Origin: Mytilus trossulus
Taxonomy: Eukaryota
NCBI RefSeq assembly: GCF_036588685.1
Contig: NC_086373.1
Coordinates: 68,386,001 to 68,450,000 of the forward strand
Length of the DNA: 64,000 nucleotides
Direction: 5' to 3'
Made by a program: the position numbers and the translations under genes. Below, in pieces: positions 12,699-41,676 of the stretch; the first letter of the stretch is position 1, and each line of letters opens with the position of its first letter. The notes beneath the pieces were generated by a model. That model did no database searches and was not told the DNA's origin. It saw nothing but the letters and a program-made list of their open reading frames with translations.

Positions 12699-13085
12699 CT
12701 CTTTTACTTTGGACATTTCTAATTCATTCTGACTGATAGTATTTTGTAACTGTTTAATTTTTCGATCGTCCTCTAACTGTCGTGTCTGTAAATGTTCTAC
12801 TTCCTGTTGGTTATCCTCTATTTTTTGTACCGACAATCCTTTACTTTGTAACATTTCTAACAGTTTTTTCATACTCTCATCTCTAGCACTTAACGTTTGT
12901 TTTTGAGTTTCTATTCTAAGTTCCATTTCGTCAACTGTCTTTTTAAGGATAAGTATCTCTTTGTTTTGTTTATCTTTCTCTCTCTGAAGAATTTCAATTT
13001 CCTGTTGCGAGATCTTAGAACTTGCCTGGACATCTTCGTAAGATTTGGTCTGGTTTTCTAATTCATGTAGATTATCACTTTGTTT
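12699..13085 (-). CDS. ERC1: ERC/ELKS/CAST coding exon 2
   Basis: Contains the conserved ERC motif LKKTVDEMELRIETQKQTLSARDESMKKLLEMLQSKGL. TTCCAG acceptor, GTGAGT donor, 387 nt phase 0. Confidence 0.93.
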
Positions 13086-16580: not shown

Positions 16581-16811
16581 AGGGCCCTCATGGGGTTTTT
16601 GATTATGTGATTACTTGGCCGTTTTTTTAATGATTATTTGATTATTAAGCTAAATATTTCATGATTATTTGATTACCTAGGACTGTATTTTTAGTTTATG
16701 ATTATTTGATTACTAAAGATAAGCAAATATTTAATGATTATGTGATTATATTGGCCAAAAAAAGGTGATTATGTGATTACTAGGACCCCCCCCCCCCCCC
16801 ATGAGGGGCCT
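16581..16811. mobile_element. MITE with 15-bp TIR, 8-bp TSD and internal GATTATNTGATTA repeats
   Basis: TIR AGGGCCCTCATGGGG / CCCCATGAGGGGCCT, flanked on both sides by CATTTTCA (16573-80 and 16812-19). Confidence 0.85.
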
Positions 16812-16872: not shown

Positions 16873-19800
16873 TCAAAAGTTACAAACCTCTGGTACTTTT
16901 GGTAGTGTTACAACTTTGAACTGTGTAATTCCCACAGTGGTATTTTTGCATTCATTATTAACAATATGTAATTGTTTAACTATTTTAGGTGGTGGAGGAT
17001 CCAGTGTGCTACTGATGTCTGCCCTTACTGCTTCTGCATTACGAATTCCTTTATTATACTTTTTCACTGCAACTGTTGACGAGTGGCCTGTCCTTTCTTG
17101 TATAAATTCTTCTTGATAGCCTTGTTTAAACATTTTTGCTGCCATGGTTGCTTTGACTGAATGATTAGTGTAATATCCCTTGTAGCCAGCCTGTTTCATC
17201 ATTTTTGAGATCAAACTGTCCAACATGTTTTTCCCTAAAGGACATCTTGAAAATACTAATCTACTCTTATTTATCGGTAAGCCAACAAAATCTCGTGAAG
17301 GACGAAACCAGAAAATATCATTTACTTTAGGAATTATCAATATGTATGTTTCCAGCAAGTTATAATAAGTACGAGGATTGTCTTCACATTTATATTGTTT
17401 AACTGGTTTGTACTTCTTGGATGAGACAATTCTAGAGGTGAATTGGACATATTTCCCAGTTTCATCTTCGCCAAATGAAAACTGACTAACACGCAGCTTC
17501 CAGAGTTCATATGATGGTCCAACACAGAAAACTTTACAAGTGTAAAAATACACTGCATATAACAAACCCCATGACATATCAAGACTGAACACTCCTTTAT
17601 CCCACAAAACTTGCTCTTGTTGGTCCGTTATCATTTGTGCCTGCTTCTTTTTTACTCCAATACCCTGTTTTATCAATTCAATACATCGCTCATCTAATGC
17701 TTTATGAAATTTAGAAAACTCTTTCTTTGTGGAATCAAACAAGCTTAAATTAGTCCAACCTGAACGTCTGAAAATGCGCTGAAATCCAGCAATTAATGAC
17801 CTTATTGAATTAGGAGGATAGGGAGCACCAGCACTATTCCTTACTTCATGTATAAATTTAATCAGTAAATCATTCAATTCTTCCTCAGTCACATTTTTGT
17901 ACACACTGTGAAGTAAAGGTACAGGTTTGCAATCTGGATCTACATTAGCCTTGTTTCTAGCTTTTGCCCAATCATTCCAAGTGTTATTTGCCCAGTTATT
18001 ATTTTTCAAGGTGTTCCCTGGAACAGATGAGTTACTCGGCTCAATATCTGTGTTCACAGCGATGTTCTTTGATGTTGAGGTATCATCTACATTGTCAGCT
18101 GCAGAAGATTTATTTATGTCAGGATCTCTGCCTCCTAAAAAATGATATCTATCAACAGGAACATTATCAGATGGTTCATTTGCTAGAGAAGTCACGCTTT
18201 CAATACAGAATGGTCCTTGGCTTATGATTTCAGAAGGTATAACGCCCTGCATATTACATGTATTTACTCTGGTATATAACAAGTTTTCAGGAGCCCCAGT
18301 AGAAGTAATAGTTTCATTAGGATTAGCATGAATTACAGTGGAAGTCTCATCACTTGTGATTTCAACTGGTTTTTCTTTTGAATAGATTTCAATGTCAGTA
18401 TTTTCTATTGGCTCTTTTTTAATTTTCTTAACCAAAGCTTCTAAGCTAGTTTCTGCATCTCTTTCTCTCTTCTTTCTATCATGTCTATTACATTTTTCGA
18501 ATAAGGATGGCCAATTTGAACTGCTTGTAACATTACAATTTAATACATTGTTACTGGTGTTTTTTGTCACATTTGTACTGGCCATAGCTGTTTCATCATT
18601 CTCATAATTTGCCTGAAAATCATGTCTTTCTGAATCTTTTTCCATTAAATCAGTTTTCAAATATGTAGAACTTTCTTCATTTGAACTGCATGAATTTTGA
18701 GAAGAATTTGGTTTTGGTAAAATTGGTTTAAGCTGCTGCAAAACAGGTTTCTGTTGTGGTTTCATTTCTGATACTTTTTTAATCATAATTTCATCAGCTA
18801 TATCCTTTTTACGGGCTGTATAAGCTGTTTTAGCTACATAAAGCATTTTTACATCAATCCATCGTAACGCTTCTTTACTTCCCTCTTCAAGCATTGATAT
18901 TATTTTTGACATATAATCCCATGAATAGGTTTTTCCATTTTCATCGACCAAATCAAAGGCAAATTCAAACACTAGTTCAAGCAACTGTTTTTTACCCCTA
19001 ACGCATTTAATCAGTTCTGTAAAACCTGTGCAGGTTAAACCTTTACTCGCCAGATTTTTTTGTTTACTTATTGCCCATTTTTTCCAATGAGTTAAAGCCT
19101 TATCCATCCAGTTTTCCTTGGAGTTTAGGTCAATATGAGTTTGTTCCTTATCTAAAAGGTGTGTTTGAGTGTCTGTATTGTCATATGATTCTTTACCGCT
19201 TTGATCATTCAACATACAAGCATTTGTCACTAAACCCGTAGGATACACTTGTCCTGAATTTAGGTTTGTATTTGCAATAGCTTCAGTTGAATTAGCACTA
19301 CCCTGCTTTTCATATTCTGGGTCTAATACTTCAGTTTTAATATTTACAGTATTTTCAATTTCCAATAATGAGGGAATATTTGTATGCTGTTTGCTAACTG
19401 GTTCAGACTTGATATGAGTAATAATTTGTCTCTGAGATGGATAATTAGATGAATTAATATTTAGAACTGGTGAAATCTGACCAATATTAACAGAAAGATT
19501 TGCATTGTTTACATCTGTTGAAAGTGGGTGTCCTAGATTTTGACCTGTAACCATTGGCTGCACCTGAAACAGCTGCTGTCCCACTTGGACATATGTACCT
19601 TGAACTGCTTGTTGTCCTTGAATCACATGTTGCATTTGACCTTGAGATGGAAAACTCTGAATAAATGGCTGACTTTGTAGAAAGGGTTGTATTTGACTTG
19701 AACTTGATAATCCACTAGGCAGCTGAGTCTGAAGAATTGTTTGTGATCTAATGTCTAGTGGCTGATTATATGGTCTTAAGTCTAACTGTATCCCTGAAGT

Positions 19801-19878
19801 TGAAGGCTGGACCTGTTCAGTCTGTTTGTGTACCTCACTTTCTCCTTGTTGAACCATTGGTTTGTATAGCACATACAT
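16873..19878 (-). CDS. Crypton-derived DUF3504/tyrosine-recombinase-fold protein (QRICH1/ZMYM/KIAA1958-like), nested in ERC intron 1
   Basis: Uninterrupted ORF with first ATG at 19878; the frame is open from 19971. The C-terminal third has CryptonA motifs: LNDLLIKFIHEVRNSAGAPYPPNS, KQAQMITDQQEQVLWDKG, GYYTNHSVKATMAAKMFKQG, IQERTGHSSTVAVKKY. The N-terminus is Q-rich. Confidence 0.85.
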   Translation of the reverse strand: MYVLYKPMVQQGESEVHKQTEQVQPSTSGIQLDLRPYNQPLDIRSQTILQTQLPSGLSSSSQIQPFLQSQPFIQSFPSQGQMQHVIQGQQAVQGTYVQVGQQLFQVQPMVTGQNLGHPLSTDVNNANLSVNIGQISPVLNINSSNYPSQRQIITHIKSEPVSKQHTNIPSLLEIENTVNIKTEVLDPEYEKQGSANSTEAIANTNLNSGQVYPTGLVTNACMLNDQSGKESYDNTDTQTHLLDKEQTHIDLNSKENWMDKALTHWKKWAISKQKNLASKGLTCTGFTELIKCVRGKKQLLELVFEFAFDLVDENGKTYSWDYMSKIISMLEEGSKEALRWIDVKMLYVAKTAYTARKKDIADEIMIKKVSEMKPQQKPVLQQLKPILPKPNSSQNSCSSNEESSTYLKTDLMEKDSERHDFQANYENDETAMASTNVTKNTSNNVLNCNVTSSSNWPSLFEKCNRHDRKKRERDAETSLEALVKKIKKEPIENTDIEIYSKEKPVEITSDETSTVIHANPNETITSTGAPENLLYTRVNTCNMQGVIPSEIISQGPFCIESVTSLANEPSDNVPVDRYHFLGGRDPDINKSSAADNVDDTSTSKNIAVNTDIEPSNSSVPGNTLKNNNWANNTWNDWAKARNKANVDPDCKPVPLLHSVYKNVTEEELNDLLIKFIHEVRNSAGAPYPPNSIRSLIAGFQRIFRRSGWTNLSLFDSTKKEFSKFHKALDERCIELIKQGIGVKKKQAQMITDQQEQVLWDKGVFSLDMSWGLLYAVYFYTCKVFCVGPSYELWKLRVSQFSFGEDETGKYVQFTSRIVSSKKYKPVKQYKCEDNPRTYYNLLETYILIIPKVNDIFWFRPSRDFVGLPINKSRLVFSRCPLGKNMLDSLISKMMKQAGYKGYYTNHSVKATMAAKMFKQGYQEEFIQERTGHSSTVAVKKYNKGIRNAEAVRADISSTLDPPPPKIVKQLHIVNNECKNTTVGITQFKVVTLPKVPEVCNF

Positions 19879-22391
19879 TGTGTGATGATTCTTAAGTTTC
19901 AGTTCAGATAAGTCAATATCAATTAGCACTTTACAATACACATAAATTGAAAGCCTTCTGTTAACAGTGCACTAAATAATCCCAAAAAGAAAGAATGTTT
20001 TCAATTTCCACTGTGGTTAGCCCATTTATTGATTTTTGTGTCCTATGATTAGTAGTGTGTAATTTTACTTGTATCATGAATAGTGATGGCATGGTGTAAA
20101 GTGTTAACATGGTTTATTTTCCTTACCTGTGTCAGTTATCAGTGTACAATTTAGATGTGAATATTTGAAGAGAGTTTGTAGGTTTTATTGTAAAAGTTTC
20201 TTTTTCTACTTAGATAACAATACAAAAAATAAAAGTCTGATTAATAAATTCCATAGAATAAAAAAAAAAAAAAAATACTTTCAAAAGCTCACTTATGGTT
20301 TAACCATTTTAAGAAATGATACCCAATTATTACAATATACCTTTGTCCTAATAATTTTTCAGAATATCTAACTAGATCACCATTAGTTAAATAGTAAACT
20401 TATTATCTATATACATTTTTAATGCTCAGGGGTTCCTAAATCACAAAAGTTGCCATTATTTACAGTATGCCATAAAACTGTCATAAATCTTCTCAAGGTA
20501 TTTAAATATGTGGGGCATCATTTGGGTTAAAAAAAATATAGTTATCATGTTTATTCAATTTCAATCATTTATTTAAGTATTTTTAGTGCATATTAAAAAG
20601 ACATTAGTATGAAATCAAAACAATAGAATTAAATGTGTTAACAGAAACAAACAATAAACAAAACAAACTTTGACAAGCAATATGTTAATATAGAAATTTG
20701 TTTTCATAAGATTTTTAATAGCTACTTCTGCATAGAGGAAATTCGTTCATGGAATTTTTATACACAATACACAATGAAGCATCTACATAAACCAAACCTG
20801 GCAGAATTTATTTTGATACATTTTGGACAATTATACTTAATAGTTCCAGGATACATGTACAAAATGCAATTTTTAAAAGAATACATGTACATGTACAAAA
20901 AAATGTAGCATCTGACAGGATAAGGTATAAAAAGTCGGAAGGTTATAGTAACACTCTATAAATTCAATTACATGCAGTTGATTATGTAACAAACTGAAAT
21001 GTTAGTAACTGTGTAAGCCTTGGGGTCAGGGTTTTATTTGATATTCAATAAGTAAACACTTACTGGGTAGAAATTGGATTCATGGGTGAGTAAAAAACTT
21101 TCCCCTCTTTATCAAAATCCTGGATCTACATTTACACCTGTACACTTCCAGCGGATGGTAACTATTACAAAATTTAATGTTTTTACTTGCAAAACATGGT
21201 ATTGATGCTGCGTTTAAAATATGATGCAGTTACAAGAGGAACATTAAACAATCGAAGTGAATGGACACATTACCCTTATTTTGAACTTTTAAAAAATATG
21301 CTTTATATAAAGCAGACATGTACTTGACAGTGTTTATTCAATGCAGAACTTTGTCTCCATTTTGTCTTTAATTGTAGCACAGATACATTTCAACATTTGC
21401 ATTACAGTCTACAACTCATTTAGATATTTAAAATATTAATATGACAAATATGATTATTAACATGACTAATAAAACATATTTTTTTATTGAATATCTGAGT
21501 GAGTACATATCTGATTACAGCTGTTGTCCATTTGTTTGATGTATTTGAGCTTTTGATTTTGCCATTTGATTAGGGACTTTCTGTTTTGATTTTGCCATTT
21601 GATTAGGGACTTTCTGTTTTGATTTTTTTATATGCCCATCTGTACTTTTTTGTCTATTGGTTGGTGTTATATGAAAAAAGTGTCCAATTCTTGTAATTAT
21701 AATGTTATGGAAATGCATGTATATCATCAGATTAGTGATGATCTAAACCAACTCCTGGTCTGTACAAGTTTTTTTTACATTAATAACAAAATCATCAAGT
21801 ATTATCTAGAGAAAAACATTTCATTGAGTGATTGTTCAAAAGTTTGGCTGTGTTGGGAAATTAGAGTATGGGAATATAATTCATTATCGGTAACTTTCAA
21901 ATATGTTCTAAAGATTTTAATAAAATATAAGGTGTGTTTTTTAAACGGAAGCCTATGCTTACATGTACATGTCTTACAAATGTCTTATAGTAAAACTAGG
22001 TACATGTATATAAAGCAACCTACAAAATGTATATTACATTTTTGTATTTCATGATGGAGGATTAAGAGGAACGCAGATTACCAGGGGTTGAAGTCATTAA
22101 ACTTTGCTCAGTGCTTGGAGTTGGAGCACAAAAATCATGCTTGAAACATGAAATCCAACATTTTGATTGGTTGATTTTGGAGTATGAGTACAAAAAAACT
22201 GACTCAAAAGTTTGGAGATTGCTCACCAACCTTTGAAAGGACTTTTTTACACTGACAAATCTATATATAGCTCAACACAGAGTTATACTTAGTATATATA
22301 TACATTCATATAATATGCTACATGAATTTTTAGGTGTATTATTAACATTTATAAGTATGTGCCAAAAATCAGTAACACTAACATTCAGCAA

Positions 22392-28580: not shown

Positions 28581-29468
28581 TTTTAATTCTGCTTGTGCCA
28601 CTTTTAACTGTTCATTCATTAAGCAATACTTTGCATTTTCTTCCTTCCGAAGTGCTCTTTCTTTCTTTAATTCAGGACTCCAAAATGTTTTAATGCTATT
28701 CATACTTGAACTTAATTTATCTTTGTAGGAGTCAACCTCTTGCTGCATTTTTGCACAATCCTTATTTAAATCTGCTATTTGTGACTGTAACTCTAGAATT
28801 AATCCATCTCTAAACGTTCTAATTTCTTGTGAATTATACACCTGGTTTGAATTTGTGTACTCAGGTCTTTCTGAAGATCGAGACCTTCCAATGTGATTGT
28901 TATGATCACGTTCTAAAGATCTAGCTCCCATATGTGGATATTCCTTGTCTATAGATTTATCACGATTAAAAGAGGATGACAGAGTATGCCAATCTCTACC
29001 CATCAACTGTTTTGATGGATCATTATGAACTGGCATTGTCAGTCTTGCAAACTGTCTATCTAACGACTGGTCTCCAATTGACATAGGACTTTGCTCGAAC
29101 TCATATCTATCACTTAAATTTCCAATGTTCCCATGACTTCCAGGTGGACTATCAAAATGGTATTTACCACCACTTGTTGGCATGCGTGGTTGTGTGCTGT
29201 AGCCATCATGCATTATGTACCTGTATGGTGAGTAATCTGGTGGTTGAGCATCAGAAATATGTGTATGACTAGGCGAGGTATTGGCATTGTGAGTAGGGGA
29301 CATTGAATTGTCTTTTGAACTGCTAGAACTTTTTCTGTTTTTTCTACCTGAAAATATGTTTTTGGGCAGAGAGGAGCTCAAGAAACCCCCTTTTTCATTG
29401 TTCGGCTTTTCCTTTGAAGGACTGGATTGCAAGGACTTAGGTCCCTTACTGCTCTTTCTTTTAAACAT
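28581..29468 (-). CDS. ERC1: ERC/ELKS/CAST family protein, first coding exon (296 codons)
   Basis: Contains the ERC/Cast signature KLSSSMNSIKTFWSPELKKERALRKEE. ATG at 29468, donor AAA|GTAAGT at 28580, phase 0. Confidence 0.95.
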
Positions 29469-30042
29469 TTTGAGGTTTGTTTTCTGACTAATTAAATTAC
29501 TTCAATAGATGTGTTTCGTCTGACGTAAACATTTTGTAAAATGAGTTCATGATTACCTCAACGATACCATTGACGGACCACAGCACAGACCAAAATTGGC
29601 AAAAATCATCACTTATCCTTCATCTATCTCGTGTATTGCAACATCTTCGTTATCATAACGGTTACAGAAGATACAAATCTGTTATACCTTCATCTTGGGG
29701 TAATTTAGATACTCGAAAAATAACGAAAATATATCGAAATCAACTAAACTTTTTAAGTTTCAGCTGCTGAGCCGAAGATGTCTCGCAAGTAATTTATGCG
29801 CCCCCTACTTCCGTTGTAAACAAATTAATATTTGACAGATTTAGAAAAGTGATTTTATAAAAAACGAATTTCAAATTTCGATATTATGTCTACAGGTTTT
29901 AAATTGCAAATGCTTTTTCTCATAACAAATTTTTATTGCATAAAAAAAAAAAAAGTTGAGACAAAACATCTGTAAGTAATAGCTTATTTTGTCAGTGTCT
30001 AGAGGCTACGCAAGTTCAAGTATATACCTAAAATGCACACTG

Positions 30043-30759
30043 AGGCACTTGTCTCAAAAAAAATCCTATATACCTTAAGGGCATACGATACAGTTACAGG
30101 GGAGGTAATGACGTTGCTAACGTAAACTGTTATTTTCGCGACGTCAAACTATGACACATCGGGAAAAGATGCATTTTTCGACTGATTTTTATCATTCAAA
30201 CTGATTTAATTTGAAAACGAGTGCATGGAACCCTATTTTTCAAAACGGTAATTTGTTTCATTTTGTAAGGAGATTATTTGACCCAAATTTTATAAAGCTG
30301 TAAATAGAGAAATTTCTTTTAATTTTGATAAACATGCATCAAAAATTAACGTTTTTTACTCAATTCATGAATATTTAATAAATATGAGGTATTTCTGAAT
30401 AGAAATTGCATAATTTTTTAGAATACTTATAACATACAGAAATAACCGATTATTTAACAAAAAACAGTTTGTGTTTATCTTTTATAACAAAAAAGTTATG
30501 TCTTTCTTTCGAAAAAGAAAATACGGCCACAAATCTTAATTTTGAGCAAATATACCAAATTTCGACCTCATTTTACTCCAAAAGTAGCACATGAAGGTAT
30601 ATTTTTTATAACATATTTGATTTAATCAGGTAAAAAATAGCCTATATGCACATTTTCATGAACTTGTAAATACAGGATCAAAACTGTATCGTGTGCCCTT
30701 AATATAACACAAGGTGTTATTATAAGGTATATAGGATTATTTTTTTTGAGACAAGTGCC
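30043..30759. mobile_element. Foldback mini-element (host of the TTAA MITE)
   Basis: Arms AGGCACTTGTCTCAAAAAAAATCCTATATACCT and AGGTATATAGGATT...TTTTTGAGACAAGTGCCT are inverted repeats. Confidence 0.75.
30079..30698. mobile_element. TTAA-target MITE (Kolobok- or piggyBac-like)
   Basis: TTAA|GGGCATACGATACAGTT...AACTGTATCGTGTGCCC|TTAA, i.e. a 17-bp TIR with TTAA duplication. Confidence 0.85.
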
Positions 30760-32586
30760 TGTGCTAAAATGGCATTTGGCTTAGCTCATCAGTGTTGAAG
30801 GCCGTACGGTGACCTATAGTTGTTAATGTTTGTGTCATTTTCGTCTTTCGTGGATAGTTGTCTCATTGGCAATCATACCACATCTTCTTTTTTATGTTGT
30901 ATTTTGAATTCAATGTACACTAAACAAACATGAAATTATTCTGTAAATCATGATGTCTAAACCAATAATTCAAAGCAAAGAAAACAATAGTATATGTAAG
31001 TGAGGTATAGTCTACCTGTCCCCGTTGAAAATAGTGCTATATGATATCCAGCAGCTACTCAGGGTTACAAGGATTTGTACAGAAACTTTACAAATTTGCT
31101 ACTGAGAAGCTTGAAACAACAAGCAGAAACAACGCAAATTCAACTTGATAATTACCTGGTATATCATAACGCTTTCAAATCTAATTCAGTTTATATACTG
31201 CACTGCGTGTATTCCCCCACCTTATTATCTCTTCAGGGATATTTGTATATACCAAAATTATTAGAACAGGTTATCTTATCAATGTTGTAATTAGATCTTT
31301 GAATATTGTTTATATTGGCACAAATATCGATTTTGTCATCATCAAATAAAACATAACTGTATTCGTTTCATTTTTTTTTTATGTTAGCCCATATGATTAT
31401 GATTATCGATATAACGTGACATATATCTCAAAAGGTTTCAATCCTAACTATCAGACTGCCTGTCGATACTTTTATTTTGTCATTGCACACAGGTCATGTC
31501 TTCCATGACTGTCCATGACATTGAAACACTACGGGGGGAGGGCTAGTTCATTTACGTCTCTGATCGGTTTGATTTTTTATTGGCCTTTAACTAGCTTTCA
31601 GATACTGCAAAAAAATATCCGATGACTATGGTTGTTTGTTTAGCCGAGGTTCTAAAGCTGTGAAAAGGCTGTGTAAGCAGAGGCTAAAAAAATGTGGAGC
31701 GTATCTAGTAAAACTGCAATTTGTTATTTCTCTGCAGTAAGATTCATTTGTATAGAAATCTGATCATGAGAAATTTAAAATAAAATTGTTGTGTCTGAAG
31801 AGTAACATCTCGATATCATACAAAGCATATAAACATTATAAGTACTATGAATAAACTTATTTTTCTGACATCGTTTTATTTTTTAATTTGATTGTTCTGT
31901 TGTCCAAAGAGTTAATTGTAATTTTTAATTATGAACCGTTTAACTGGTGATTCCTCGCATACATTTTATTAAAGTTTATTTAGAAAAATGAAGAAACATA
32001 AATTGTTAGTACGTTCTTTGTCATCGGTGGTCTCTGGTTAGGTAGATAGTTGAATCAGTGGAACTAATACCACATCTTCTTATTTGTGTGTAGACCGTAT
32101 TAAATTACTCAACTTCCGTGAGAAATTCAGTTGTGTTGATTGTCCCTTGCGTAACTTCCAGTAGCGGAAATATTTCATTCGTTCGTAACGTCTCGTCAAG
32201 ACTGTCCTTCACCCGTGATTTATTTATACGTGCCAGTATCTTTTATGTCCAATAACCAAAAAATGTACAGATGTGTAGTTCTATAGTTTAACGTATGTCT
32301 CTCCCTCTTGTTATTGACCTCATACGACTTTAAGACTTGTATAAAATGTGCGTTTAGAATGATTTATTTCATATTTCATAAGACAAACCATCTTCAAAAT
32401 CCTTATACTTCCAGTAAATATCCAATTGTACGGCGTGTGTTCCTATGTCCATACGAAAGCTTTATTTAGATTAGACATATACTTATAATATACAAAAACA
32501 TTGATGCCTGCCTAATCTTGACGGCTTCAAAGGATTACATGGATGGGGCCGTTTGATCGAAAGTCCAATAATCAGCTGCACCAAGA

Positions 32587-32620
32587 CAGGGACTTTATAT
32601 AATAGTATAGAAAGTCCCTG
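32587..32620. mobile_element. 34-bp palindromic micro-insertion with 7-bp TSD
   Basis: ACCAAGA|CAGGGACTTTATATAATAGTATAGAAAGTCCCTG|ACCAAGA. Confidence 0.65.
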
Positions 32621-35600
32621 ACCAAGACTCATGTCTTGTGCATTTTATTTTTTTCTGCAAGAATTAGATAAAACATTTGGAAAAATTCTTATTAGAAGTC
32701 ACTAAAATGTCTCAAAATTTGTAAACGCATTTTTTAAAATATTTATTACGAAGCTATAAAGAATTATCGACAAATAATATTTCATTTAGTTATAGTTGAT
32801 CGCATTTGCTGTCGAAGATTACCGCGGATCGTGACTGGACTTAGGCAAATAATCAGCACAGAGCACGTGGAACATGTGACAAATAAGTGAGTTGATAGAG
32901 CCTTGATTGTTTTTGTTTATAATCTTTCATACGGTTCCATTTGTTAAGCTTTAAAATGATTGTGTTGTATTTATGCATAATTGGCTTTTCAAGAATCAGC
33001 TATTACTTTTCACCTTCAAGGACAGAGCACCTTCGTCAACGTCACTGCATCATGTGACACTGATGAATATATCGGCGATTTGGTGTACGGGAAGTCAATA
33101 AATGTATTTCAATAAGAAAACATTTATCTAGATTTTGATAATATAAAAAATATTTTCTTCAACAAGAGAGTTCACGTACACTTGTTTTAACAGACAATGA
33201 CTTTGGAATGACAAATTAAGTAAAAAAAACAAAACAAAAAACATAATCAAAACCAGGAATCGAAATTCGCACTAGCACAGTAGTTTCCCCCACCTTTCAA
33301 ATTTGAGCTGGAGAAGTATGTTTCCACATTATAGTTCTTAATTGAGCATGAAATAAAAGATCACCGACAGAACTTTGATAATGCCCATCCATAAAAGGGT
33401 ATTATACCCTCTTCAATATACCAATTGTCACACTATAATGTTGTCAGTTAATCAATCAAATCATAATAAAAAAATAATTGATGGTATGTTATGAACAACA
33501 TGTGATTTTTGTTTTTAATCTGACCAGAAGCGCTCATTGAGGAATAGACCTCCCTCTTTCTATTTTTGTGTGTGTGTTATAATGTTCCGACCGTGCGAGA
33601 GTCATGATACTCTCATGGCCATGATAGCCCGGCAAGGTCGGTGACACCACTGAGAGTTAGTTTTTTTTAATATCTATATGATTTGGAAAATAAAACAAGT
33701 TTTTACTGATATAACACCCTTCTTATTCTGCTTATCTCATCCTTGCTTTCTCTAAACTTAGACCAATGATTACTTGCGTAGTAAACATCAGTATGTTGAG
33801 TTTTCTAAAACTGAAAAATTAGGCTATGATCACGACTATGATAATCATATTAGGCTATATGTCTCTGATGTCTTAAAGCCGTACACCCAATAAAAATTAT
33901 CCAAAAGAGCATCATTTCAAACACGTTATATATGTGAAAATATTGATAAATACTCACAAAAATTCATATTATATAGAAAAAGGGTTGTCTACATTTTATA
34001 TGTCTCTAAACGCCTGTGATTATTTTTGGATTTGAACCATTAAATTATCAAAATTTTGATCTTTAGGCTAAATATTGGGATATATTTGTTTTATGACAAC
34101 TGGTGTCATTTGTTAAACAAGTTTGAAGTTCCTAACCTTCCCTAACCTGGGACAGTTGTGTAGATAGTGGTGTAGACAAATTGGTACTGTTTCAATCTCC
34201 GGCGCAGAGTTCATATCCGTTCCATACATGCTTTGCAATACTGCACTTAATATGACCTCTGCCACACATTGTCCGACTCCATGAGGAAATTTCCTCATGG
34301 CCGACAAGCATTCGGTATTCTCTGCAAAGTCCCTTGCGTGATACACAATTTAGCGAGGATTGTCGAAAAAAATATTTGCGGAAGGTTAGGAGTAATGAGG
34401 TAAAGTGGCGATGGCGGAAATTATGAGAATCATCTCATCGCTTCATCTCCTTCAACTAGGATTGTCGCCAAATTGAAGTTTAAAAATTACTTTGACGAAA
34501 CGTGCATCTGACGCAAACACAAAATTTCAATCCTGGTAACTATGAGGAGTATATTTGAAGCGAAAAAAGAAGAAATTCTATGAATTTTGCAGACAGGCTA
34601 TATGTAGGCTACGGCAATCTGTTGAGTCTTTCAAGTATTTTATCACTCGGTTAGCACTTTTGATCCTGGTCTAGGATGGTAGTTGTCAATTCAGTATAGC
34701 TCTATGTACTCCACATGGGTTTGTTACAATTTGCCGGGTTCATACATAAGAAACCCCAAAAAATCACACTTCAGTTTACATATCATAGTGCCGTGATAGA
34801 CATATTTTAAAATAGAAGCATAGGCGGACCCAGGGGCCCTCCCTTTTCTTGAGAAAAAAAAAATGGTTGATTTTATAGGGATTCGCTGAAGCATGGCTGG
34901 AGTGGGCTCCCTTTGGTCAGTCAGATAACTCCCCCCCCCCCCCCCCTTTTTGAAAAGTTCTGGATACGCCACTGAGGAGACAAATTAAGTGGAAACAAAG
35001 TACATGTAAGTGAAAGTCTTATATGTGTTTCAAATCATTGTATTAAATTGATACAATGATTTGAAACACAGTTGCTATGGGGGTTCTACCCTTGTATTTT
35101 TTCGGTTTTTGTATAGATAAAAAGTAAACCCAGCAAATTGTAACAAAACCCCTCCCTGTGTTCCAAAGTTTTTGCAAAAAGTAAAAAAAATTAGAAATGA
35201 AGAAAATCTAAGGTTGGGATTTCTGGAATAAAGTGCTAGGTATTACTAAACATTGCTAAAAGGCCACACTTAAAAATTTGTTGGTTTGCCCGAACCCTAC
35301 ATTCAATGGCTGAGACAGTGGGTAGGTAGACATTTCCTTTTTTCAACAAAAAAGGAAATTGAAGTATCAGCTGTTTATTAGTCTTCCTGCCTATCTGATT
35401 AAAAAAAGAAACTTCTTCAAATCAGGACAATAAAAAGATTTTTATTAGGCAGCTATTTTCTGGGTAGGTAGGCTAAGGGTTAGGGCAAGCAAACATATTC
35501 CTTTTTATGGTCCAATGCATCCTTACCATTAGGAATCCATTAAACTTCCATTAAAAAAGGTACATGGCAAATATTAACAAACCTCTGTGATACCTGTATA

Positions 35601-37599
35601 TTAAACAGCACAACCCTTTGTCAGAGGGAAAGCCTCTCATAGCTTGGTGGGGTTGTACCTTACCTTATAAAAATTCCTGCTACCAAATGAGAAAAATATA
35701 TTGCTTTGCTTCCATGAAGCCTATTCTTGTGCAAGCATTCTACAGTACATAGACACCTATAGGAAATAATTCTTTCAAATTCTGAATCTTGCAGTATAAC
35801 ACTAGACAATGGTTTTATTACTCTACTTTTATTCTTGCATTATTCCCCTTCTCTAATGTATCATATAATCTTGACTTTTACTGCACATTAACCAATGTCT
35901 ATTATTTAATATACATGATTGGGGACTGGGTTTTAAGCTAGCAGATACCTTGGTAGATGTTACACCCAAATTATGTCCTGATACTCTTGGCATTATCAAT
36001 AATTGATATTGGAGTTCTGTGCACTAAACTAGTGATGAATGTATGTACTGTTAATCAATTGTTATTATTTCAAGTTGAAAAACAATCTGGATCCATTATC
36101 ACTGCTAAAAAAATAATGTCTCAATAGCAACAAACACATCTCATATTTTTTATTCAGTAAGCCAACAAAACCTGGAATCTACATCAGCTTAAATTTATCA
36201 TCTAGTTAAACATTTTACATGCCATATTGAATTCAGAATAAATTCAAAAACCATTGTCAGCACATTCACATACCCCATGTCCCCACATTGTCAGTGGACA
36301 AACATCTACCTAGAATGTCCTTGTTGTCTACAAAGCTTAATAAGATTCTATTGTGAAGTTTCATAGAATTTGCAATGAAAAACTATATTGTAGAAGTATA
36401 GTTGAGGCCAATAAGTTCAAAGGGGAATAACTTCTAGAAAAAGACTTGAATCACAATTTCCTGTTGATATGCACATCTATAAAGTTATATGAAGTTCTCT
36501 TACAAGAGGGTTTTCAGAGGAGTTGTGATGACAAGTTGTTGAAGACCAGGAATGACAGACAGACAAATGCATGGGTCAAAAACATTATCCCCCTCTGCAA
36601 GTTCATTGTGTGGGGTCATGAAATAATTGTCATTGTAAGAGGTAATAATACTGAACTTTCTCATGCATCAATACAACCATTTAATCAAGCACAGACATGA
36701 TGTACATGTATCCAGTGTGAGATGATTTAACCCATTATAATTTATTTGCAAGACAACTGTTATTACTGCTTTCTTTTTGTTGATGGCAGATCTTTATTTG
36801 TAACTGAAGTATTTTATTAAGATTTTTGTGTTTTGGAATGCTGTCCAATTGACTCATACCAATTATTTCCTTGAATTCATATGCTTAAATCTCAAATCTT
36901 AGGTAAAAAGTTAAATCAGTTTTATCTGTACATTACTGAAGTTATGAGTAGTATAAAGCAAAAGGCTTTTTGGGAAGTTTTAAAAATGTAAACAATGTGA
37001 AGGACATTCATATTTCCATACTACTTGGCTAAAACTGATAAAATGTATTCTTCATTTCTATTTTAATTGCTAACAACAATATGTTCATGATAGATTTAAG
37101 AAGACATAAAAAAATTTCAAAACAGCAATTAATAAAATTCATTGTAATTAATACATGTATTAAATGCACACAAATTTGGATGTGCAATTAGAATCACTCC
37201 AATTCACTCATTGAAACATGAATCATTTTTTTATGAGTTCTTAAGTCTTGTTTGTAAGTTCTTTTAAAGTGAAAGTCTATTCCATTTGTGTGTATAATCT
37301 ATGCAGGTGTGTAATGCTTCTCATGTTTCTATGATCAGGTTAACATAATTGTGATCTGAAAATATAATTAAAAAAAAAATATCTTTTTAATTTCCAGTTT
37401 TTATTAAGATAAGGGAAATACATGGTATGCCATTGTTTGTCAACACTTTATTCAATATCTCAAAGGAGTAGAGGCATAAAAGACCCTTATTTGACTCAAA
37501 TTAATATTGCTGCAAATTTAAAAGTCATCTTAATCCTAAACATTTAGAAATTTGTACAAACTAGACTAAGGAGCTAAAATAATAAAATAAGTATAACTT

Positions 37600-38750
37600 T
37601 AACCATATGCTCTGCAGAGAACAGCTGTATAAGACCCCAGATGTCCAATCCTGAACAGTTGGGCAAGTATTGACACAAAATTCAAGCTTGATATAGCTCT
37701 GAATTTGGATTGTGAATAAATAGTTGACACAAAACAGGTTTCTGACACAGAATGAATGTGGTATTAAATTGAATTGGAAATTTACCTATTATTGGCCAAC
37801 ATCCAAAATCAAAATACATTGTTAGATTCAGCAGATGAAATAACCCCAAGAATTCAGTTTTTGAAGAAATCTAATAAAGTTTCATTTTGAACCTTTTAGT
37901 CTTCAATGTATATCCATATATTCAATTTTTTTTTAATTTTGGACCTCGATTTAGACGAGTTTGAAAACTGGGCCCATAATCGAAAATCTAAGTACATGTT
38001 TAGGTTTGGCAAATCAAAGAACCCAAAGAAATTATTTTTTGATAAACTCAAGCTAAGTTTAATTTTGGACCCTTTGGACCTTAATGTAGACCAGTTTGAA
38101 AACAGGAACAAAATTAAAAAAAATAAAAATCTAATTACACAGTTAGATTCAGCATATCAAATTAAGCAAATATATTTCAATTTTAGATCAAAGTTTAATT
38201 TTGGACCCTTTTGGTCCCTTATTCATAAACTGGTGGGACCAAAACCCCCAAAAATAAATCGCAACCTAACTTTTGTGGTCATGAACCTTGTGTTTAAATT
38301 TTATAGATTTCTATTTACTTATACTTAAGTTATTGAGTGAAAACCAACAAAATTGCTTATTTATGCCCCTTTTTTGCCCCTATATAATTCCTAATCTTTG
38401 AGACCCAAACCCCCCTAAATCAATCCCAACCTTCCTTTTGTGGTCATAAACCTTGCCTTTAAATTTCATAGATTTCTATTACTTATTCTAAAGTGATTGA
38501 GCCAAAACCAAAATCAACTGCTTAAAAGATGTATTTGAGCCCCTTTCTGGACCCTTTTTCAAAAACCGTTTAGACCAAAACCCCTATAATCAATCTCAAC
38601 CTTTCTTTTAAGGTCATGAAGCTTATTTTATAAATTTGTATTCACTTGTACTACAGTTATTGTGCAAAAACAAATAAAAATGATTATTTAAGCCCCTTTT
38701 TGGCCCCTAATTCCTAAACCATAGGGACCAAAATCCATCTCAAGCTTCCT
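37600..38750 (-). mobile_element. Diverged copy of the 25726-27551 HINE-like family
   Basis: The same motifs occur in the same order (CCTGAACAGTTGGG, TTCAAGCTTG, TTTTGGACCCTTTGGACCTTAATGTAGACC) with many substitutions. Confidence 0.75.
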
Positions 38751-41256
38751 GTCTATGGTATGCATATGAACTACATGTTGACTATAGGATGGCAATATTA
38801 TTCTACTCATAATTGTAAAAGGTGGCAAATTATGGCTACCACTACAGTAATTGTTTACTGAAAACAAATAAGTTACAGACTTTTTATAAAATGTGTTAAC
38901 GAAACTGTAAGTTTATAAGACTTTGCAGTGTCTGTGCATTTTAATTTATGCTAAACAGATAGTACATGATTTTGTTTTTCTATCATATGCATTTTGTATA
39001 AAAATCTACAAATAAGTCTGTGTTACTATCTCATCCAGATGGAGAGTAACTTTTACAGGATAAAAATGTGTCCATTTTGGTATATTATCTGGTAGTTTAA
39101 ACACCAACTTAACACCAACACCAATATGTAGAAAATCATATTGATTTCAACACTATAAGAGGTGAAAAGCAAAATGTGAAAGCATTCTTTAATATCAATA
39201 TCATGAATATACATGTATTATATTTTATTTTCTATTTTTTTTTTCATAAATGCCAATTAAATGAATTGTGTTCCTTATTTATTTGAAATAAAAAAACAAA
39301 ATTCTATAGGAAAATATACAAGTTATTTTTCCAATTATTAGTAAAGAAACTATTATCCTAAAAATCATTGCTATTTTGTAAAATGATAAAAAAAAAATGC
39401 TTTCATAAGCTTAACTAGCTCACATTTGTTCGTCTGCAGTTGGATTCGAACCAACATACAACAAGTGTATTTCCCTTATTTACAGACTTTATATAATGAA
39501 CTTTGTTATTATAGAGCATACATTTTATCTTTAAGCAAAAAAAAAGAGACTAGAAGCAACATAGGGCCAAATGAGTAAATTGAAGCAAAAATAAAAAAGA
39601 TAAAGCAATGAGTGAGATACAAAGTAACAAATGGTGGCTTGTGCTTGATCAGTTGTTTGTATAGTTGTATACCAATCCCAAGTATAAATGAATACTATAA
39701 TATGCTAGAAATACTGAAACCCTCTCAATTTCATACTTGGTTTCCTGCAAAAGAATAAAGCAAAATTAAATATTTTTATGGTGTATTTATCTTCATCATG
39801 TATATACAAATCAGGTCTAATCTTAATAAATTGGCATAATTAAAAAAAGAATCCAATTGTTACATTCAACATATGCATAATTGTTTTAGTCCTGTCCATC
39901 CACTTCTTATTCTTCTTCTATTAACAATTTACAACTGTACTCATGGTCATTTGAAGAACTGCAATTTAGATGAATGGTAACTTAAAAGTAAAGCCAGTAT
40001 TTTTAAAAGTATTTAATTACTCCTATAGAAAATGTATGGCATATGTATAGCTAGATATTGACTCAATTTCTACATACACTGTACATGTATGAACATCTTT
40101 TTACAATGTTTACTATGTATGATTTGTATGATCCTGTGTTTGCATGTAAATAGAGTAATTACACTGCAGATGTATATGAATAGCACAACATTTACAAACT
40201 ATTTAAAACTTCAGTACTTTGTAGCATTATGAATTTTGTGAAGAAAACTTTGACATTATGTAATGCACTACATAAGAGAAGTTAATCAGTCTTAAACATT
40301 TGTGTTAAACTTTAATTGAAAATAAAATTGTCAAATATTTTATAATTTGATTGATATAATTAATTTCATGTTATACTCAGTAGTCTGTCTTTTTACTCCA
40401 GATGCCCCTTTGAGTCATCTTTTGGCATAACATTGTCATAACTGCTAAAATGAAAGGAAATTATAGAAGCAGTAGTTAGAGATAATTTCCTAATGTATGT
40501 AGAGTAAGAATTTGGTTAACTTGCTTGTTTTGTTTGTATATTGTACAATTGTTATTGGGATAACATTCAATTAAATTGAAATATAATATACAAGTTTAAA
40601 TAACTATTCCTATCTATATTGTTTGCAGATGTCAATCTTAATCACAATGCTTGAGCTACATAGCAGGCAAGTCTACCAAAGTCTTATTTTACGAGCATTA
40701 GGAAATTAGCTCTAATGAGAATTATAACCACATTTCTGTTTAAGTCATAAACATTCAACAAGAGTTTATATAATATATATCATTTTTTTATCATGTTGAG
40801 TATAAGGTATACATTTGTACTTATTCAAATATTATTTGTTTGATTGTCTAGAACTTAAAGTGTCAATAATTTCAGTGCGTTCATTATATTGACAGCTTAC
40901 AGTCAAGCAATCCATCACTTGGCCTTTGTAAAAAATTCAGGGAATATTTTTTTGTGTCTGATAATGTCACATAGACTTAAACTACATCTCATTGTTGAAG
41001 GCCATAATGTGACCTATAGTTGTAAATGTCTTTAATTTTTGTCTTTTGTGGATATTTGTCTCATTGGCAATCATACCACATATTCTTTTTTATACATAAC
41101 TATGATTTCTATCTTTAAAATGAATAATAAAAAAAACAGATTCAAATAAATAGGCAAAACTTTCACCAGCTGTTTGTATGACCCTATCTATCCTTTCTTT
41201 GTGTGCATTTGTTTGCAAAACTGTAAGGAAACACATTTGTACCTAACAGAAAAAGA

Positions 41257-41373
41257 CAATCTAATTAAAATTAAATCCTTTAAATGCTCCTGTTCTGATA
41301 TGTCACGCATCAAGGCTTGATGCGCAACATATCAGAACAGGAGCAAATAAAGGATTTAATTTTAATTAGATTG
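41257..41373. mobile_element. 117-bp foldback MITE with 10-bp TSD (Mutator-like)
   Basis: Near-perfect hairpin CAATCTAATTAAAATT...AATTTTAATTAGATTG flanked by CAGAAAAAGA on both sides. Confidence 0.85.
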
Positions 41374-41539
41374 CAGAAAAAGATTGACTTTAAATAAAAC
41401 TATGGTCATATTGAGTGTAGTGTTACAAAGTATTGAACGGAACGGATATGTGAGCTCTGCGCCGGAGATTGGTACTGTTTATGTTATAATGGGTGATAAT
41501 TCGTTTTATTTTATTTAATGCGTAAAATGGTCTAGGCAA

Positions 41540-41590
41540 AAATGATTGGACAACTCCGACACAATGCGCGAAATTCAACTTCCTGTGGTT
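41540..41590 (+). promoter_or_regulatory. Putative RAD52 proximal promoter: CCAAT box, E2F site, CHR-like motif, ETS-like motif
   Basis: ATTGG at 41545, GCGCGAAA at 41566-73 directly followed by TTCAA, and ACTTCC at 41578, all 60-100 bp upstream of the ATG. Confidence 0.4.
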
Positions 41591-41646
41591 ATAAACATCA
41601 CAACAATCATCAGAAAAAAGCTGATATCTTGGAATTTGTACATGCA

Positions 41647-41676
41647 ATGGAGCACAAACCTGCCTGTTTTGGACAG
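41647..41676 (+). CDS. RAD52: RAD52 exon 1 ([10 protein letters not shown])
   Basis: CFGQ matches the residues that precede the RAD52 N-terminal domain; CAG|GTTAG donor. Confidence 0.8.

What the first reader, a model, noticed from the sequence alone, without database searches (positions are those of the whole stretch)
16873..19971. Intact, apparently catalytically dead Crypton tyrosine-recombinase gene nested in the ERC intron: candidate domesticated transposon gene
Seen: a ~1000-codon stop-free single-exon ORF inside ERC intron 1, on the same strand, amid 30%-GC DNA where other elements are decayed. Known: its C-terminal ~380 aa follow the CryptonA tyrosine-recombinase (YR)/DUF3504 pattern, the source of the domesticated ZMYM2/3/4, QRICH1, KIAA1958 and KCTD1 domains. 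Seen: the usual F-x-L-R-S/G-G-x-E catalytic Arg reads FCVGPSYE (Gly at 17518-20). H-x-x-R reads HSVK (Lys at 17152-54), and the SKN-x-QGG lysine loop appears shortened. The second His (TGH, 17083-85) and the Tyr (17056-58) are retained. The N-terminus is Q-rich like QRICH1, has three psi-K-x-E SUMO motifs (IKSE, IKTE, IKKE) and a basic RKKR NLS. Inference: a host-recruited nuclear DNA/chromatin-binding protein rather than an active transposon.
Basis: partly seen in the sequence, partly recalled or inferred. Interest (0 to 1): 0.85.

Follow-up and report, generated by a model that had tools for sequence, protein, structure and literature searches.

The report
Tamed Crypton exon spliced onto ERC
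In the first intron of the mussel ERC/ELKS scaffold gene lies a single-copy coding exon derived from a Crypton transposon recombinase; it has lost key catalytic residues, is kept intact across mussel species, and is annotated as spliced onto ERC, so it looks like a host gene that captured a transposon protein.

Summary
The genome is Mytilus trossulus. Window 16873-19971 (-) holds a 1032-codon stop-free frame, 1001 codons from the ATG at 19878. Its C-terminal ~380 aa match the Pfam QRICH1 domain, DUF3504 and, weakly, Phage_integrase, and fold like Cre and human QRICH1.

It is single-copy by DNA; the next protein relative in the genome is 33% identical. Orthologues exist in five Mytilus species and in two more distant unnamed lineages (51-59% identity). 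Folded domains are as conserved as the flanking ERC exons, while linkers drift.

Arg I is Gly in every orthologue and the catalytic-lysine hairpin is shortened. The HSVK lysine is not a loss: 20 of 29 relatives and intact multi-copy mussel Cryptons carry the same Lys.

New here:
- Every annotated Mytilus model (1741-1762 aa, at least two kinds of source: NCBI XP predictions and depositor-submitted genome annotations) splices this exon at GAG|GTTTGT (16888) in frame onto ERC exon 2 (13085).
- This replaces ERC exon 1. A canonical 1058-aa ERC isoform coexists.
- A second, orphan recombinase N-terminal domain lies at aa ~265-360.

Verdict: a domesticated Crypton gene (~0.9), most likely an alternative first coding exon of ERC (~0.65). 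It is a new member of a known kind.

The parts
16888..19878 (-). Coding part of the Crypton-derived exon: 997 codons from the ATG (MYVLYKP...) to the last codon GAG before the splice donor.
   Evidence: 100% identical to residues 1-997 of XP_063398361.1 (P0001).
16873..16887 (-). Splice donor GTTTGT (GT at 16887-16886). If unspliced, it reads as 4 extra codons (VCNF) plus TGA.
   Evidence: Sequence. Junction PKVPE|KQSDN in P0001, P0002, P0003 and P0195. The [E/Q]-V-C tail is kept in P0004, P0005 and P0006, and sequence diverges right after it in P0173 and P0174.
19879..19973 (-). In-frame, stop-free 31-codon leader plus a candidate 3' splice site (pyrimidine tract, AG at 19973-19972). Use unproven.
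   Evidence: Sequence. Not used by any annotated model.
19474..19878 (-). Gln-rich, low-complexity N-terminus (aa 1-135, 21% Q). Conserved start MYV[LV]YKP.
18799..19086 (-). Orphan, degenerate copy of the recombinase N-terminal (QRICH1-type, Cre core-binding-like) domain, aa ~265-360.
   Evidence: hhalign against the second copy: 97% probability, E 7.8e-11. AF2 pLDDT 87.6. Best structural matches are Cre residues 37-128 (Z 8.0-8.4) and QRICH1 471-595 (Z 7.5). 13 invariant columns across orthologues.
18412..18477 (-). Basic RKKR cluster (18466-18477) and the IKKEP SUMO-type motif (18412-18423) in the disordered linker. Further psi-K-x-E motifs at 19402-19413 (IKSE) and 19330-19341 (IKTE).
   Evidence: IK[ST]E is kept in all six aligned orthologues and KKIK[KE]E in five.
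17692..17997 (-). QRICH1 domain (PF25561), the N-terminal domain of the recombinase fold.
   Evidence: E 1.7e-10. 98-99% identical to the M. galloprovincialis and M. edulis models and 91-93% to the M. californianus and M. coruscus models.
17053..17631 (-). DUF3504 / tyrosine-recombinase catalytic-type domain. Arg I is Gly (17518-20) and the Lys hairpin is shortened (around 17404-17424). HSVK (17152-17163), His (17083-85) and Tyr (17056-58) are kept.
   Evidence: AF2 pLDDT 85. Foldseek top hits are QRICH1 9hjt_H and Cre.
28581..29468 (-). ERC coding exon 1 (296 aa, ends in phase 0, AAA|GTAAGT). It is the canonical alternative to the Crypton exon.
12699..13085 (-). ERC exon 2 (acceptor cag|AAA, phase 0). 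This acceptor is shared by ERC exon 1 and by the Crypton-derived exon.

Best explanation
This is a domesticated Crypton (tyrosine-recombinase transposon) gene of mytilid mussels.

Shown: a Crypton-type coding sequence sits in the first coding intron of the single ERC/ELKS/CAST gene, on the sense strand. It has lost the first catalytic arginine and the catalytic-lysine hairpin. It carries a Gln-rich, SUMO-motif-bearing N-terminal extension and a second orphan recombinase N-domain. It has been kept as an intact single-copy ~1000-codon exon across mussel species.

Most likely expression mode (annotated in five species, not verified here with reads): it serves as an alternative first coding exon. 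A donor (GAG|GTTTGT at 16888), four codons before the stop, joins it in phase 0 to ERC exon 2 (13085). The result is a ~1759-aa chimera in which the 296-aa ERC N-terminus is replaced by the dead recombinase module, while a canonical 1058-aa ERC is made from exon 1.

Inferred: the recombinase fold now acts as a non-catalytic DNA-, chromatin- or protein-binding module, as in QRICH1 and ZMYM. The ERC coiled coil would supply oligomerisation and partner binding. Failure to splice at the weak donor would give a 1001-aa stand-alone protein.
For: Domain identity:
- Pfam QRICH1 domain and DUF3504 above cut-off, Phage_integrase just below.
- Two-domain Cre/QRICH1 fold.

Single copy.

Orthologues:
- M. 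galloprovincialis 89% identity and M. californianus 83%, with M. edulis and M. coruscus models in the same clusters.
- Two unnamed lineages at 51-59% overall and 59-66% in the C-terminal domain.
- They form one clade (SH-aLRT 99) with a long stem and short internal branches. M. trossulus pairs with M. galloprovincialis; M. californianus and M. coruscus fall outside that pair.

Domain-wise constraint, M. trossulus against the galloprovincialis/edulis models and against the californianus/coruscus models:
- Folded domains 96-99% and 91-93%, the same as the ERC part (97-98% and 93-94%).
- Linkers 81-90% and 75-82%, with in-frame gaps only.

Catalytic residues:
- Arg I is Gly in all orthologues, against R in 26 of 29 relatives.
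- The hairpin K column is S, against K in 26 of 29, and the loop is about 10 residues shorter.

Fusion:
- Eight listed models from five species fuse the exon to ERC exon 2: NCBI XP models for four species, plus M. edulis CAG2216491 and M. coruscus CAC5406907.
- Four of the five models examined share the junction PKVPE|KQSDN.
- Donor and acceptor are both phase 0.
- A canonical isoform, P0196, coexists.
- Distant orthologues keep [E/Q]|V-C, compatible with AG|GTNTGY, at the end of their frames. Sequence after it varies in length (F*, NF*, 16-18 aa) even between members that are at least 90% identical. That pattern is expected if the frame ends at a conserved donor rather than at the stop.
- In the distant lineage the gene and an ERC exon fragment have identical longest-contig lengths, 408,499 and 100,874 bp.
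Against: - The fusion therefore rests on gene predictions, and predictors tend to chain same-strand ORFs.
- The M. edulis CAG2216491 model uses a different path to ERC exon 2.
- The donor GTTTGT is weaker than the neighbouring ERC donors.
- ERC proteins listed for other bivalves (Pecten, Pinctada, Saccostrea, Mya, Solemya) show no fusion.
- Orthologous DNA was not obtainable, so dN/dS and donor conservation are inferred from protein only.
- The molecular function is untested.
Confidence: 0.6

Rival explanations
1. Free-standing nested gene. The exon is transcribed from its own promoter inside ERC intron 1, terminates at TGA 16873 and is polyadenylated in the intron, giving only a 1001-aa QRICH1-like nuclear protein. 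The ERC fusions would be gene-prediction artefacts.
For: - A stop lies 4 codons after the donor.
- Distant orthologues were called as stand-alone 900-1114-aa ORFs on short contigs.
- The donor is weak.
- One annotation disagrees on the junction.
- Other bivalve ERCs are unfused.
Against: - Models from two kinds of source in five species converge on the same in-frame junction.
- The V-C codons at the donor are conserved while the following tail and stop position are not.
- There is no AATAAA on the coding strand for about 900 nt after the stop. This is weak evidence.
- The ORF callers used on contigs cannot see splicing.
Confidence: 0.27
2. Cassette or alternative last exon of ERC. ERC exon 1 splices to the candidate acceptor at 19972, which is in frame. 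The exon then either stops at 16873, giving ERC N-terminus plus dead recombinase, or continues to exon 2 as a 3084-nt phase 0-0 cassette, giving about 2086 aa.
For: - A pyrimidine tract plus AG lies exactly at the start of the open frame.
- ERC exon 1 ends in phase 0.
- The exon length 19971-16888 is a multiple of three (my arithmetic).
Against: - No annotated model in any of five species includes ERC exon 1 upstream of this exon; all start at MYVLYKP.
- Thirty-one stop-free codons upstream of the ATG have a chance probability of about 0.08-0.1 (my arithmetic).
- The conserved N-terminus begins at the Met in distant orthologues.
Confidence: 0.06
3. Still a working recombinase. The retained Tyr, both His and the Lys/Arg II position would support site-specific cleavage or recombination with a non-canonical active site, for a host function or for mobilising other Cryptons.
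For: - Tyr, the His of HxxK, His III and the Glu of the box I region are kept in Mytilus and in P0004 and P0005.
- This differs from vertebrate DUF3504 genes, which lost Tyr and Arg II (PMC3212892).
Against: - Arg I and the general-acid Lys hairpin are missing in all orthologues.
- P0006 has also lost the Tyr while the rest of the domain stays conserved, so the Tyr is dispensable for whatever is selected.
- The Tyr segment is low-confidence in the model: pLDDT below 50 at model residues 328-334.
- It is single-copy, and no terminal repeats flank it.
Confidence: 0.04
4. An inert, recently inserted or decaying Crypton copy with no host function.
For: It lies in AT-rich, repeat-rich intron DNA. 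A young MITE sits 62 nt away.
Against: - The 1032-codon frame is intact.
- It is single-copy.
- It has orthologues down to 51% identity with the same architecture.
- Its domains are as conserved as the ERC exons.
Confidence: 0.02

Closest known systems
Crypton-derived DUF3504 host genes: QRICH1, WOC/ZMYM2-4, KIAA1958, KCTD1 (Kojima & Jurka 2011, PMC3212892). A QRICH1 structure exists in the Zincore complex, PDB 9hjt.
   Same: - A recombinase fold reused without a full catalytic site.
- A Gln-rich N-terminal region, as in QRICH1.
- Single-copy and conserved.
- QRICH1 is the top Foldseek match. A profile of this protein and its closest relatives (alignment A1) hits it at E 4e-27.
   Different: - Not an orthologue. 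The protein itself does not hit QRICH1 in the PDB at E<=1. Its nearest relatives are Crypton-like proteins at 34-39% identity.
- It keeps Tyr and both His, which the vertebrate genes lost, and loses Arg I and the Lys hairpin instead.
- No MYM zinc-finger domain appeared in the Pfam scan.
- Single exon.
- It carries a duplicated N-domain.
- It is restricted, as far as these databases show, to mytilid-type mussels.
- It is spliced to ERC.
Crypton YR sequence in an intron of ATF7IP in birds, predicted to be alternatively spliced into ATF7IP (PMC3212892, section 9).
   Same: A conserved Crypton-derived recombinase ORF inside an intron of a host gene on the sense strand, with a predicted fusion transcript. 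At the time there was no mRNA or EST for the fusion transcript.
   Different: - The host gene differs: ERC/ELKS/CAST rather than ATF7IP.
- The phylum differs.
- Here the TE exon supplies the N-terminus and the catalytic site is incomplete. The bird YR was suggested to possibly retain activity.
Host-transposase fusion genes formed by 'transposase capture' through alternative splicing (Cosby et al., bioRxiv 10.1101/2020.05.07.082677).
   Same: A transposon coding exon with its own splice site is joined to host exons, and the host-only isoform persists. The abstract states that transposons supply exons and splice sites and that transposase domains are captured.
   Different: Those cases are vertebrate. 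From my own knowledge, not read here, they mostly involve DDE-type transposases giving transcription factors. Here the captured protein is a tyrosine recombinase in a mollusc, joined to a coiled-coil cytomatrix/Golgi scaffold.
Apparently intact multi-copy Crypton-like elements of the same mussel genome (e.g. L002, and the tandem copies L004-L006).
   Same: 31-41% identity over the recombinase domains. Shared HS[GV]K, TGH and Y motifs.
   Different: Those keep Arg I (FGLRGRDEH) and the SK...GGL hairpin, are multi-copy or tandem, and lack the 620-aa N-terminal extension.

Membership tests
Crypton-derived (DUF3504) domesticated host gene | Recombinase-derived domains recognisable by profile and by fold | tested here: met
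   PF25561 at 41.4 bits (cut-off 30.8) and PF12012 at 39.9 bits (cut-off 29.7). Cre/QRICH1 fold with pLDDT 85.
Crypton-derived (DUF3504) domesticated host gene | Incomplete catalytic set | tested here: met
   Arg I is Gly and the Lys hairpin is shortened in all orthologues. Tyr is also lost in P0006.
Crypton-derived (DUF3504) domesticated host gene | Single-copy, vertically inherited, under constraint | tested here: met
   (single copy). (domain-wise conservation; one clade whose Mytilus branching fits the accepted species grouping).
Crypton-derived (DUF3504) domesticated host gene | Expressed as mRNA or protein | not testable with these tools
Only annotation models are available.
Active Crypton transposon | Complete catalytic residues (R, K, H-x-x-R/K, H/W, Y) | tested here: not met
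Active Crypton transposon | Multiple similar copies and element termini | tested here: not met
   Only itself by DNA search. No terminal direct or inverted repeats bracket the ORF.
QRICH1 / WOC / ZMYM orthology group | Closest sequence relatives are QRICH1/ZMYM, with MYM zinc fingers or the QRICH1 architecture | tested here: not met
   The PDB QRICH1 sequence is not hit by the protein itself at E<=1. The nearest relatives are Crypton-like. No MYM zinc-finger family appeared in the Pfam scan. No tree including vertebrate sequences was built.
Host-transposase fusion gene (transposase capture by splicing) | TE-derived exon with a splice site in frame with a host exon | tested here: met
   GAG|GTTTGT at 16888 and cag|AAA at 13085, both phase 0.
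Host-transposase fusion gene (transposase capture by splicing) | Fusion transcript exists and the host-only isoform persists | tested here: inconclusive
   Fusion models in five species and the canonical P0196. No reads were examined.

The most novel reading that the evidence does not exclude
The chimera would be a mussel-specific nuclear ELKS isoform. A SUMO-regulated dead recombinase that still recognises Crypton-type DNA sites would bring the ELKS coiled coil to chromatin. There it could repress or tether the many active Cryptons of mussel genomes, or link ELKS-type signalling to transcription. That would be a recombinase-derived transposon regulator built by exon capture.
Probability: 0.08. 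Interest if true: 0.8.

Novelty: new member of a known kind. Interest (0 to 1): 0.5.

Why it matters
Domesticated Cryptons are known mainly from ancient vertebrate and bilaterian genes whose origin is blurred by age. Here the active relatives still live in the same genome, and the captured copy is lineage-restricted, intact and apparently spliced onto a well-studied scaffold gene. That makes it a tractable case for asking three things: what a dead tyrosine recombinase is selected for, whether transposase capture by splicing also operates outside vertebrates and with non-DDE enzymes, and what an ERC/ELKS coiled coil does when given a nuclear-type head. The RefSeq models are currently labelled 'uncharacterized protein' (the two depositor-submitted models are named ERC1 or CAST2). 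In the paper library searched here I found no paper that describes this gene.

Tried and rejected
- The search for related loci on metagenome contigs with P0155 found nothing. I did not use the second scan, because exact peptides of a JGI-listed protein had already failed.
- phmmer of the whole protein against the PDB gave only marginal hits. A profile and the fold search were needed.
- Pairwise BLASTP of the two N-domains was not significant, E 25. Only profile-profile and structure comparison showed the duplication. Z ~8 for a helical domain is suggestive on its own, not decisive.
- Foldseek alone on the orphan domain gave no hit at E<=0.001.
- The AATAAA scan is uninformative in AT-rich DNA, with 240 hits against 208 expected.
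- The long 'homologues' P0007, P0008, P0011 and P0018 each carry several recombinase units (2-3 DUF3504 stretches), probably merged tandem Crypton copies, and none carries the ERC (Cast) domain.
- The careful tree did not finish, so the quick IQ-TREE result is reported.
- I built no joined or spliced sequence myself. The fusion was examined only through database proteins returned by the tools and exon by exon on the window.


Full report
**1. Observation**

The window is Mytilus trossulus chromosome-scale contig C1:68386001-68450000.
- On the minus strand, 16873-19941 is listed as a 1022-aa ORF from a GTG.
- The first ATG is at 19878, giving 1001 aa, and the frame is stop-free from 19971.
- It is the only ORF of 100 aa or more between 16000 and 21000.
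- At about 34% GC, a run of 1032 stop-free codons has a chance probability of order 1e-35 (my arithmetic).
- IKSE, IKTE, IKKE and RKKR are present, and the first 135 residues are 21% Gln.

**2. Domain identity**

Sequence and fold of the C-terminal module:
- Pfam gives the QRICH1 domain (E 1.7e-10) and DUF3504 (E 5.8e-10), both above cut-off. Phage_integrase scores 26.0 bits, just under its 27.1 cut-off.
- The alignment to archaeal XerA places HSVK on H-x-x-R, TGH on the second His and KKY on the nucleophile Tyr.
- An AlphaFold model of the last 392 residues, built with a 30-sequence alignment, has pLDDT 85.
- Its best Foldseek matches are human QRICH1 in the Zincore complex (9hjt_H) and then many Cre recombinase chains, aligned over both domains.

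A second recombinase N-domain sits upstream, at residues ~265-360:
- Profile-profile comparison with the QRICH1-type domain gives 97% probability, E 7.8e-11.
- Modelled alone it has pLDDT 87.6.
- Its seven best structural matches are the N-terminal domains of Cre and its engineered variant Tre (Z 7.2-8.4) and QRICH1 (Z 7.5). For a helical domain this Z range is only suggestive.

The overall architecture is therefore:
- a Gln-rich disordered head;
- an orphan recombinase N-domain;
- a disordered linker with RKKR and a conserved KKIK[KE]EP motif;
- a complete recombinase module (N-domain plus catalytic-type domain);
- a short, poorly conserved tail.

**3. Catalytic residues**

Compared with its 29 closest relatives and with Crypton-like ORFs of the same genome:

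| Position | This protein | Relatives |
|---|---|---|
| Arg I | Gly | R in 26 of 29 |
| Hairpin Lys (SK..GGL) | Ser; loop about 10 residues shorter | K in 26 of 29 |
| Arg II (H-x-x-R) | Lys (HSVK) | K in 20 of 29, R in 8 |
| His III | kept | H in 25 of 29 |
| Tyr | kept | Y in 23 of 29 |

- All orthologues share the Gly and the short loop.
It is also found in the multi-copy, otherwise intact mussel elements, which read HSGK. It is a clade trait, not a sign of inactivation.
- The most distant orthologue (P0006) has lost the Tyr as well, while the domain stays conserved. That argues the Tyr is not what selection maintains.

**4. Copy number and conservation**

Copy number:
- DNA search of the 1.3-Gb genome finds only the locus itself.
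- The best other protein match is 33% identical and covers only the recombinase part.

Orthologues:
- M. galloprovincialis is 89% identical and M. californianus 83%. M. edulis and M. coruscus models sit in the same 90% clusters.
- Two unnamed lineages come from metagenome and run assemblies: P0004/P0005 at 1088-1114 aa and P0006 at 900 aa. They are 51-59% identical overall and 59-66% in the C-terminal domain.
- P0004/P0005 share the full architecture, including the MYV[LV]YKP start. P0006 lacks the Gln-rich head (or is truncated there). All six share an IK[ST]E motif, the YPTGL motif, both N-domains and the DPPPPK tail.

Identity of M. trossulus to the other Mytilus models, by region:

| Region | vs M. 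galloprovincialis / M. edulis | vs M. californianus / M. coruscus |
|---|---|---|
| Three folded domains | 96-99% | 91-93% |
| ERC part of the same proteins | 97-98% | 93-94% |
| Linkers | 81-90% | 75-82% |

Gaps in the linkers keep the downstream frame.

In a quick ML tree the orthologues form one clade (SH-aLRT 99) on a long stem. Internal branches are short. M. trossulus pairs with M. galloprovincialis (SH-aLRT 95), while M. californianus and M. coruscus fall outside that pair. The relatives have a median terminal branch of 0.85.

This is the pattern of a vertically inherited gene under purifying selection. Formal dN/dS could not be computed because no orthologous DNA was obtainable.

**5. 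Relation to ERC**

Gene structure:
- Pfam Cast matches and tblastn place ERC coding exon 1 at 29468-28581. It encodes 296 aa and ends AAA|GTAAGT in phase 0.
- Exon 2 lies at 13085-12699, with acceptor cag|AAA in phase 0.
- The canonical 1058-aa ERC of M. galloprovincialis (P0196) joins these two exons directly.

The fusion models:
- All eight full-length database models that contain this ORF, from five species, are 1741-1762 aa and carry both the QRICH1 and Cast domains. They comprise NCBI XP models for four species, M. edulis CAG2216491 and M. coruscus CAC5406907.
- They start at MYVLYKP and leave the ORF at GAG|GTTTGT (exon end 16888), four codons before the stop.
- They continue in frame with ERC exon 2. 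The junction is PKVPE|KQSDN in four of the five models examined. The older M. edulis model takes another route to the same exon 2.

Indirect support from the distant orthologues:
- Their called ORFs end ...HQ-VC-F*...HQ-VC-YYTLV...* and ...NE-VC-SSHS...*.
- The [E/Q]-V-C codons are compatible with AG|GTNTGY, a splice donor. They are kept, while everything after them differs even between members that are at least 90% identical.
- That is what a conserved donor followed by unconstrained intron would look like. By my rough estimate, a V-C dipeptide within the last ~20 residues has a chance of a few per cent per lineage.
- P0155 and P0167 have the same longest-contig lengths (408,499 and 100,874 bp) as the ERC exon fragments P0181 and P0182. 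This implies linkage to ERC in that lineage too.

**6. What remains open**

The fusion is therefore an annotation-level result. I put it at about 0.65.
- A stand-alone protein made by read-through of the weak donor is the main rival, and the two could coexist.
- A candidate acceptor sits exactly at the start of the open frame (AG at 19973-19972). No annotated model uses it.
- ERC proteins listed for Pecten, Pinctada, Saccostrea, Potamilus, Solemya and Mya are unfused. The event therefore looks restricted to mytilid-type mussels.

**7. Comparison with known systems**

- Kojima and Jurka (PMC3212892) showed that DUF3504 in QRICH1, WOC/ZMYM2-4, KIAA1958 and KCTD1 derives from Crypton recombinases. 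They also described a conserved Crypton recombinase ORF in an ATF7IP intron of birds with a predicted fusion.
- One database protein, P0022, combines ATF7IP_BD with the QRICH1 domain and DUF3504.
- Cosby et al. (bioRxiv 10.1101/2020.05.07.082677) established transposase capture by alternative splicing in vertebrates.
- The mussel gene works like these but is not an orthologue of QRICH1/ZMYM. It does not hit QRICH1 in the PDB by itself and its nearest relatives are Crypton-like proteins at 34-39% identity. It retains Tyr and His, which the vertebrate genes lost, and it lost Arg I and the Lys hairpin instead.
- I found no paper describing it in the library searched.

**8. Verdict**

HSVK is not a loss, and the exon is probably spliced onto ERC rather than free-standing.
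- It is a new member of a known kind: an independent, lineage-restricted Crypton domestication with a new host partner.
- The proposed non-catalytic DNA-, chromatin- or protein-binding role and nuclear localisation are inferences from fold, motifs and analogy.

Noticed in passing
window 16581-16811: A MITE with 15-nt terminal inverted repeats (AGGGCCCTCATGGGG / CCCCATGAGGGGCCT), six internal 31-37-nt tandem units and a poly-G run. It lies 62 nt downstream of the ORF stop. There are at least 873 first-look candidates genome-wide, and the top 40 are 96-99% identical, so it is a young high-copy family.
   Followed up: partly
L003 = G000:C4:64500843-64501730 (+): A 603-aa ORF, 35% identical to the recombinase part. 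It also lacks Arg I (His instead), the first His (Asn) and the Tyr. It could be a second dead Crypton-derived gene. In the tree it is weakly sister to the ERC-intron gene (SH-aLRT 79, very long branch).
   Followed up: partly
L004-L006 = G000:C8:8982537-8990551: Three tandem Crypton-like copies spaced 3661 nt apart, with intact R, K, HSGK, H and Y. L009 and L014 are further copies. This fits earlier notes on tandem Cryptons in this genome.
   Followed up: no
P0022 (database protein, 1063 aa): Combines ATF7IP_BD with the QRICH1 domain and DUF3504. This is the architecture of the ATF7IP-Crypton fusion that Kojima and Jurka predicted for birds. Its organism is not known here.
   Followed up: no
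window 29468-41647: ERC exon 1 starts at 29468. I did not examine it.
   Followed up: no
P0173 / P0174 compared with P0005: Members of one 90% cluster diverge immediately after ...THQVC (F* against YYTLVKQYRHIRFVSK*). This suggests an indel in unconstrained sequence just past the putative donor.
   Followed up: partly
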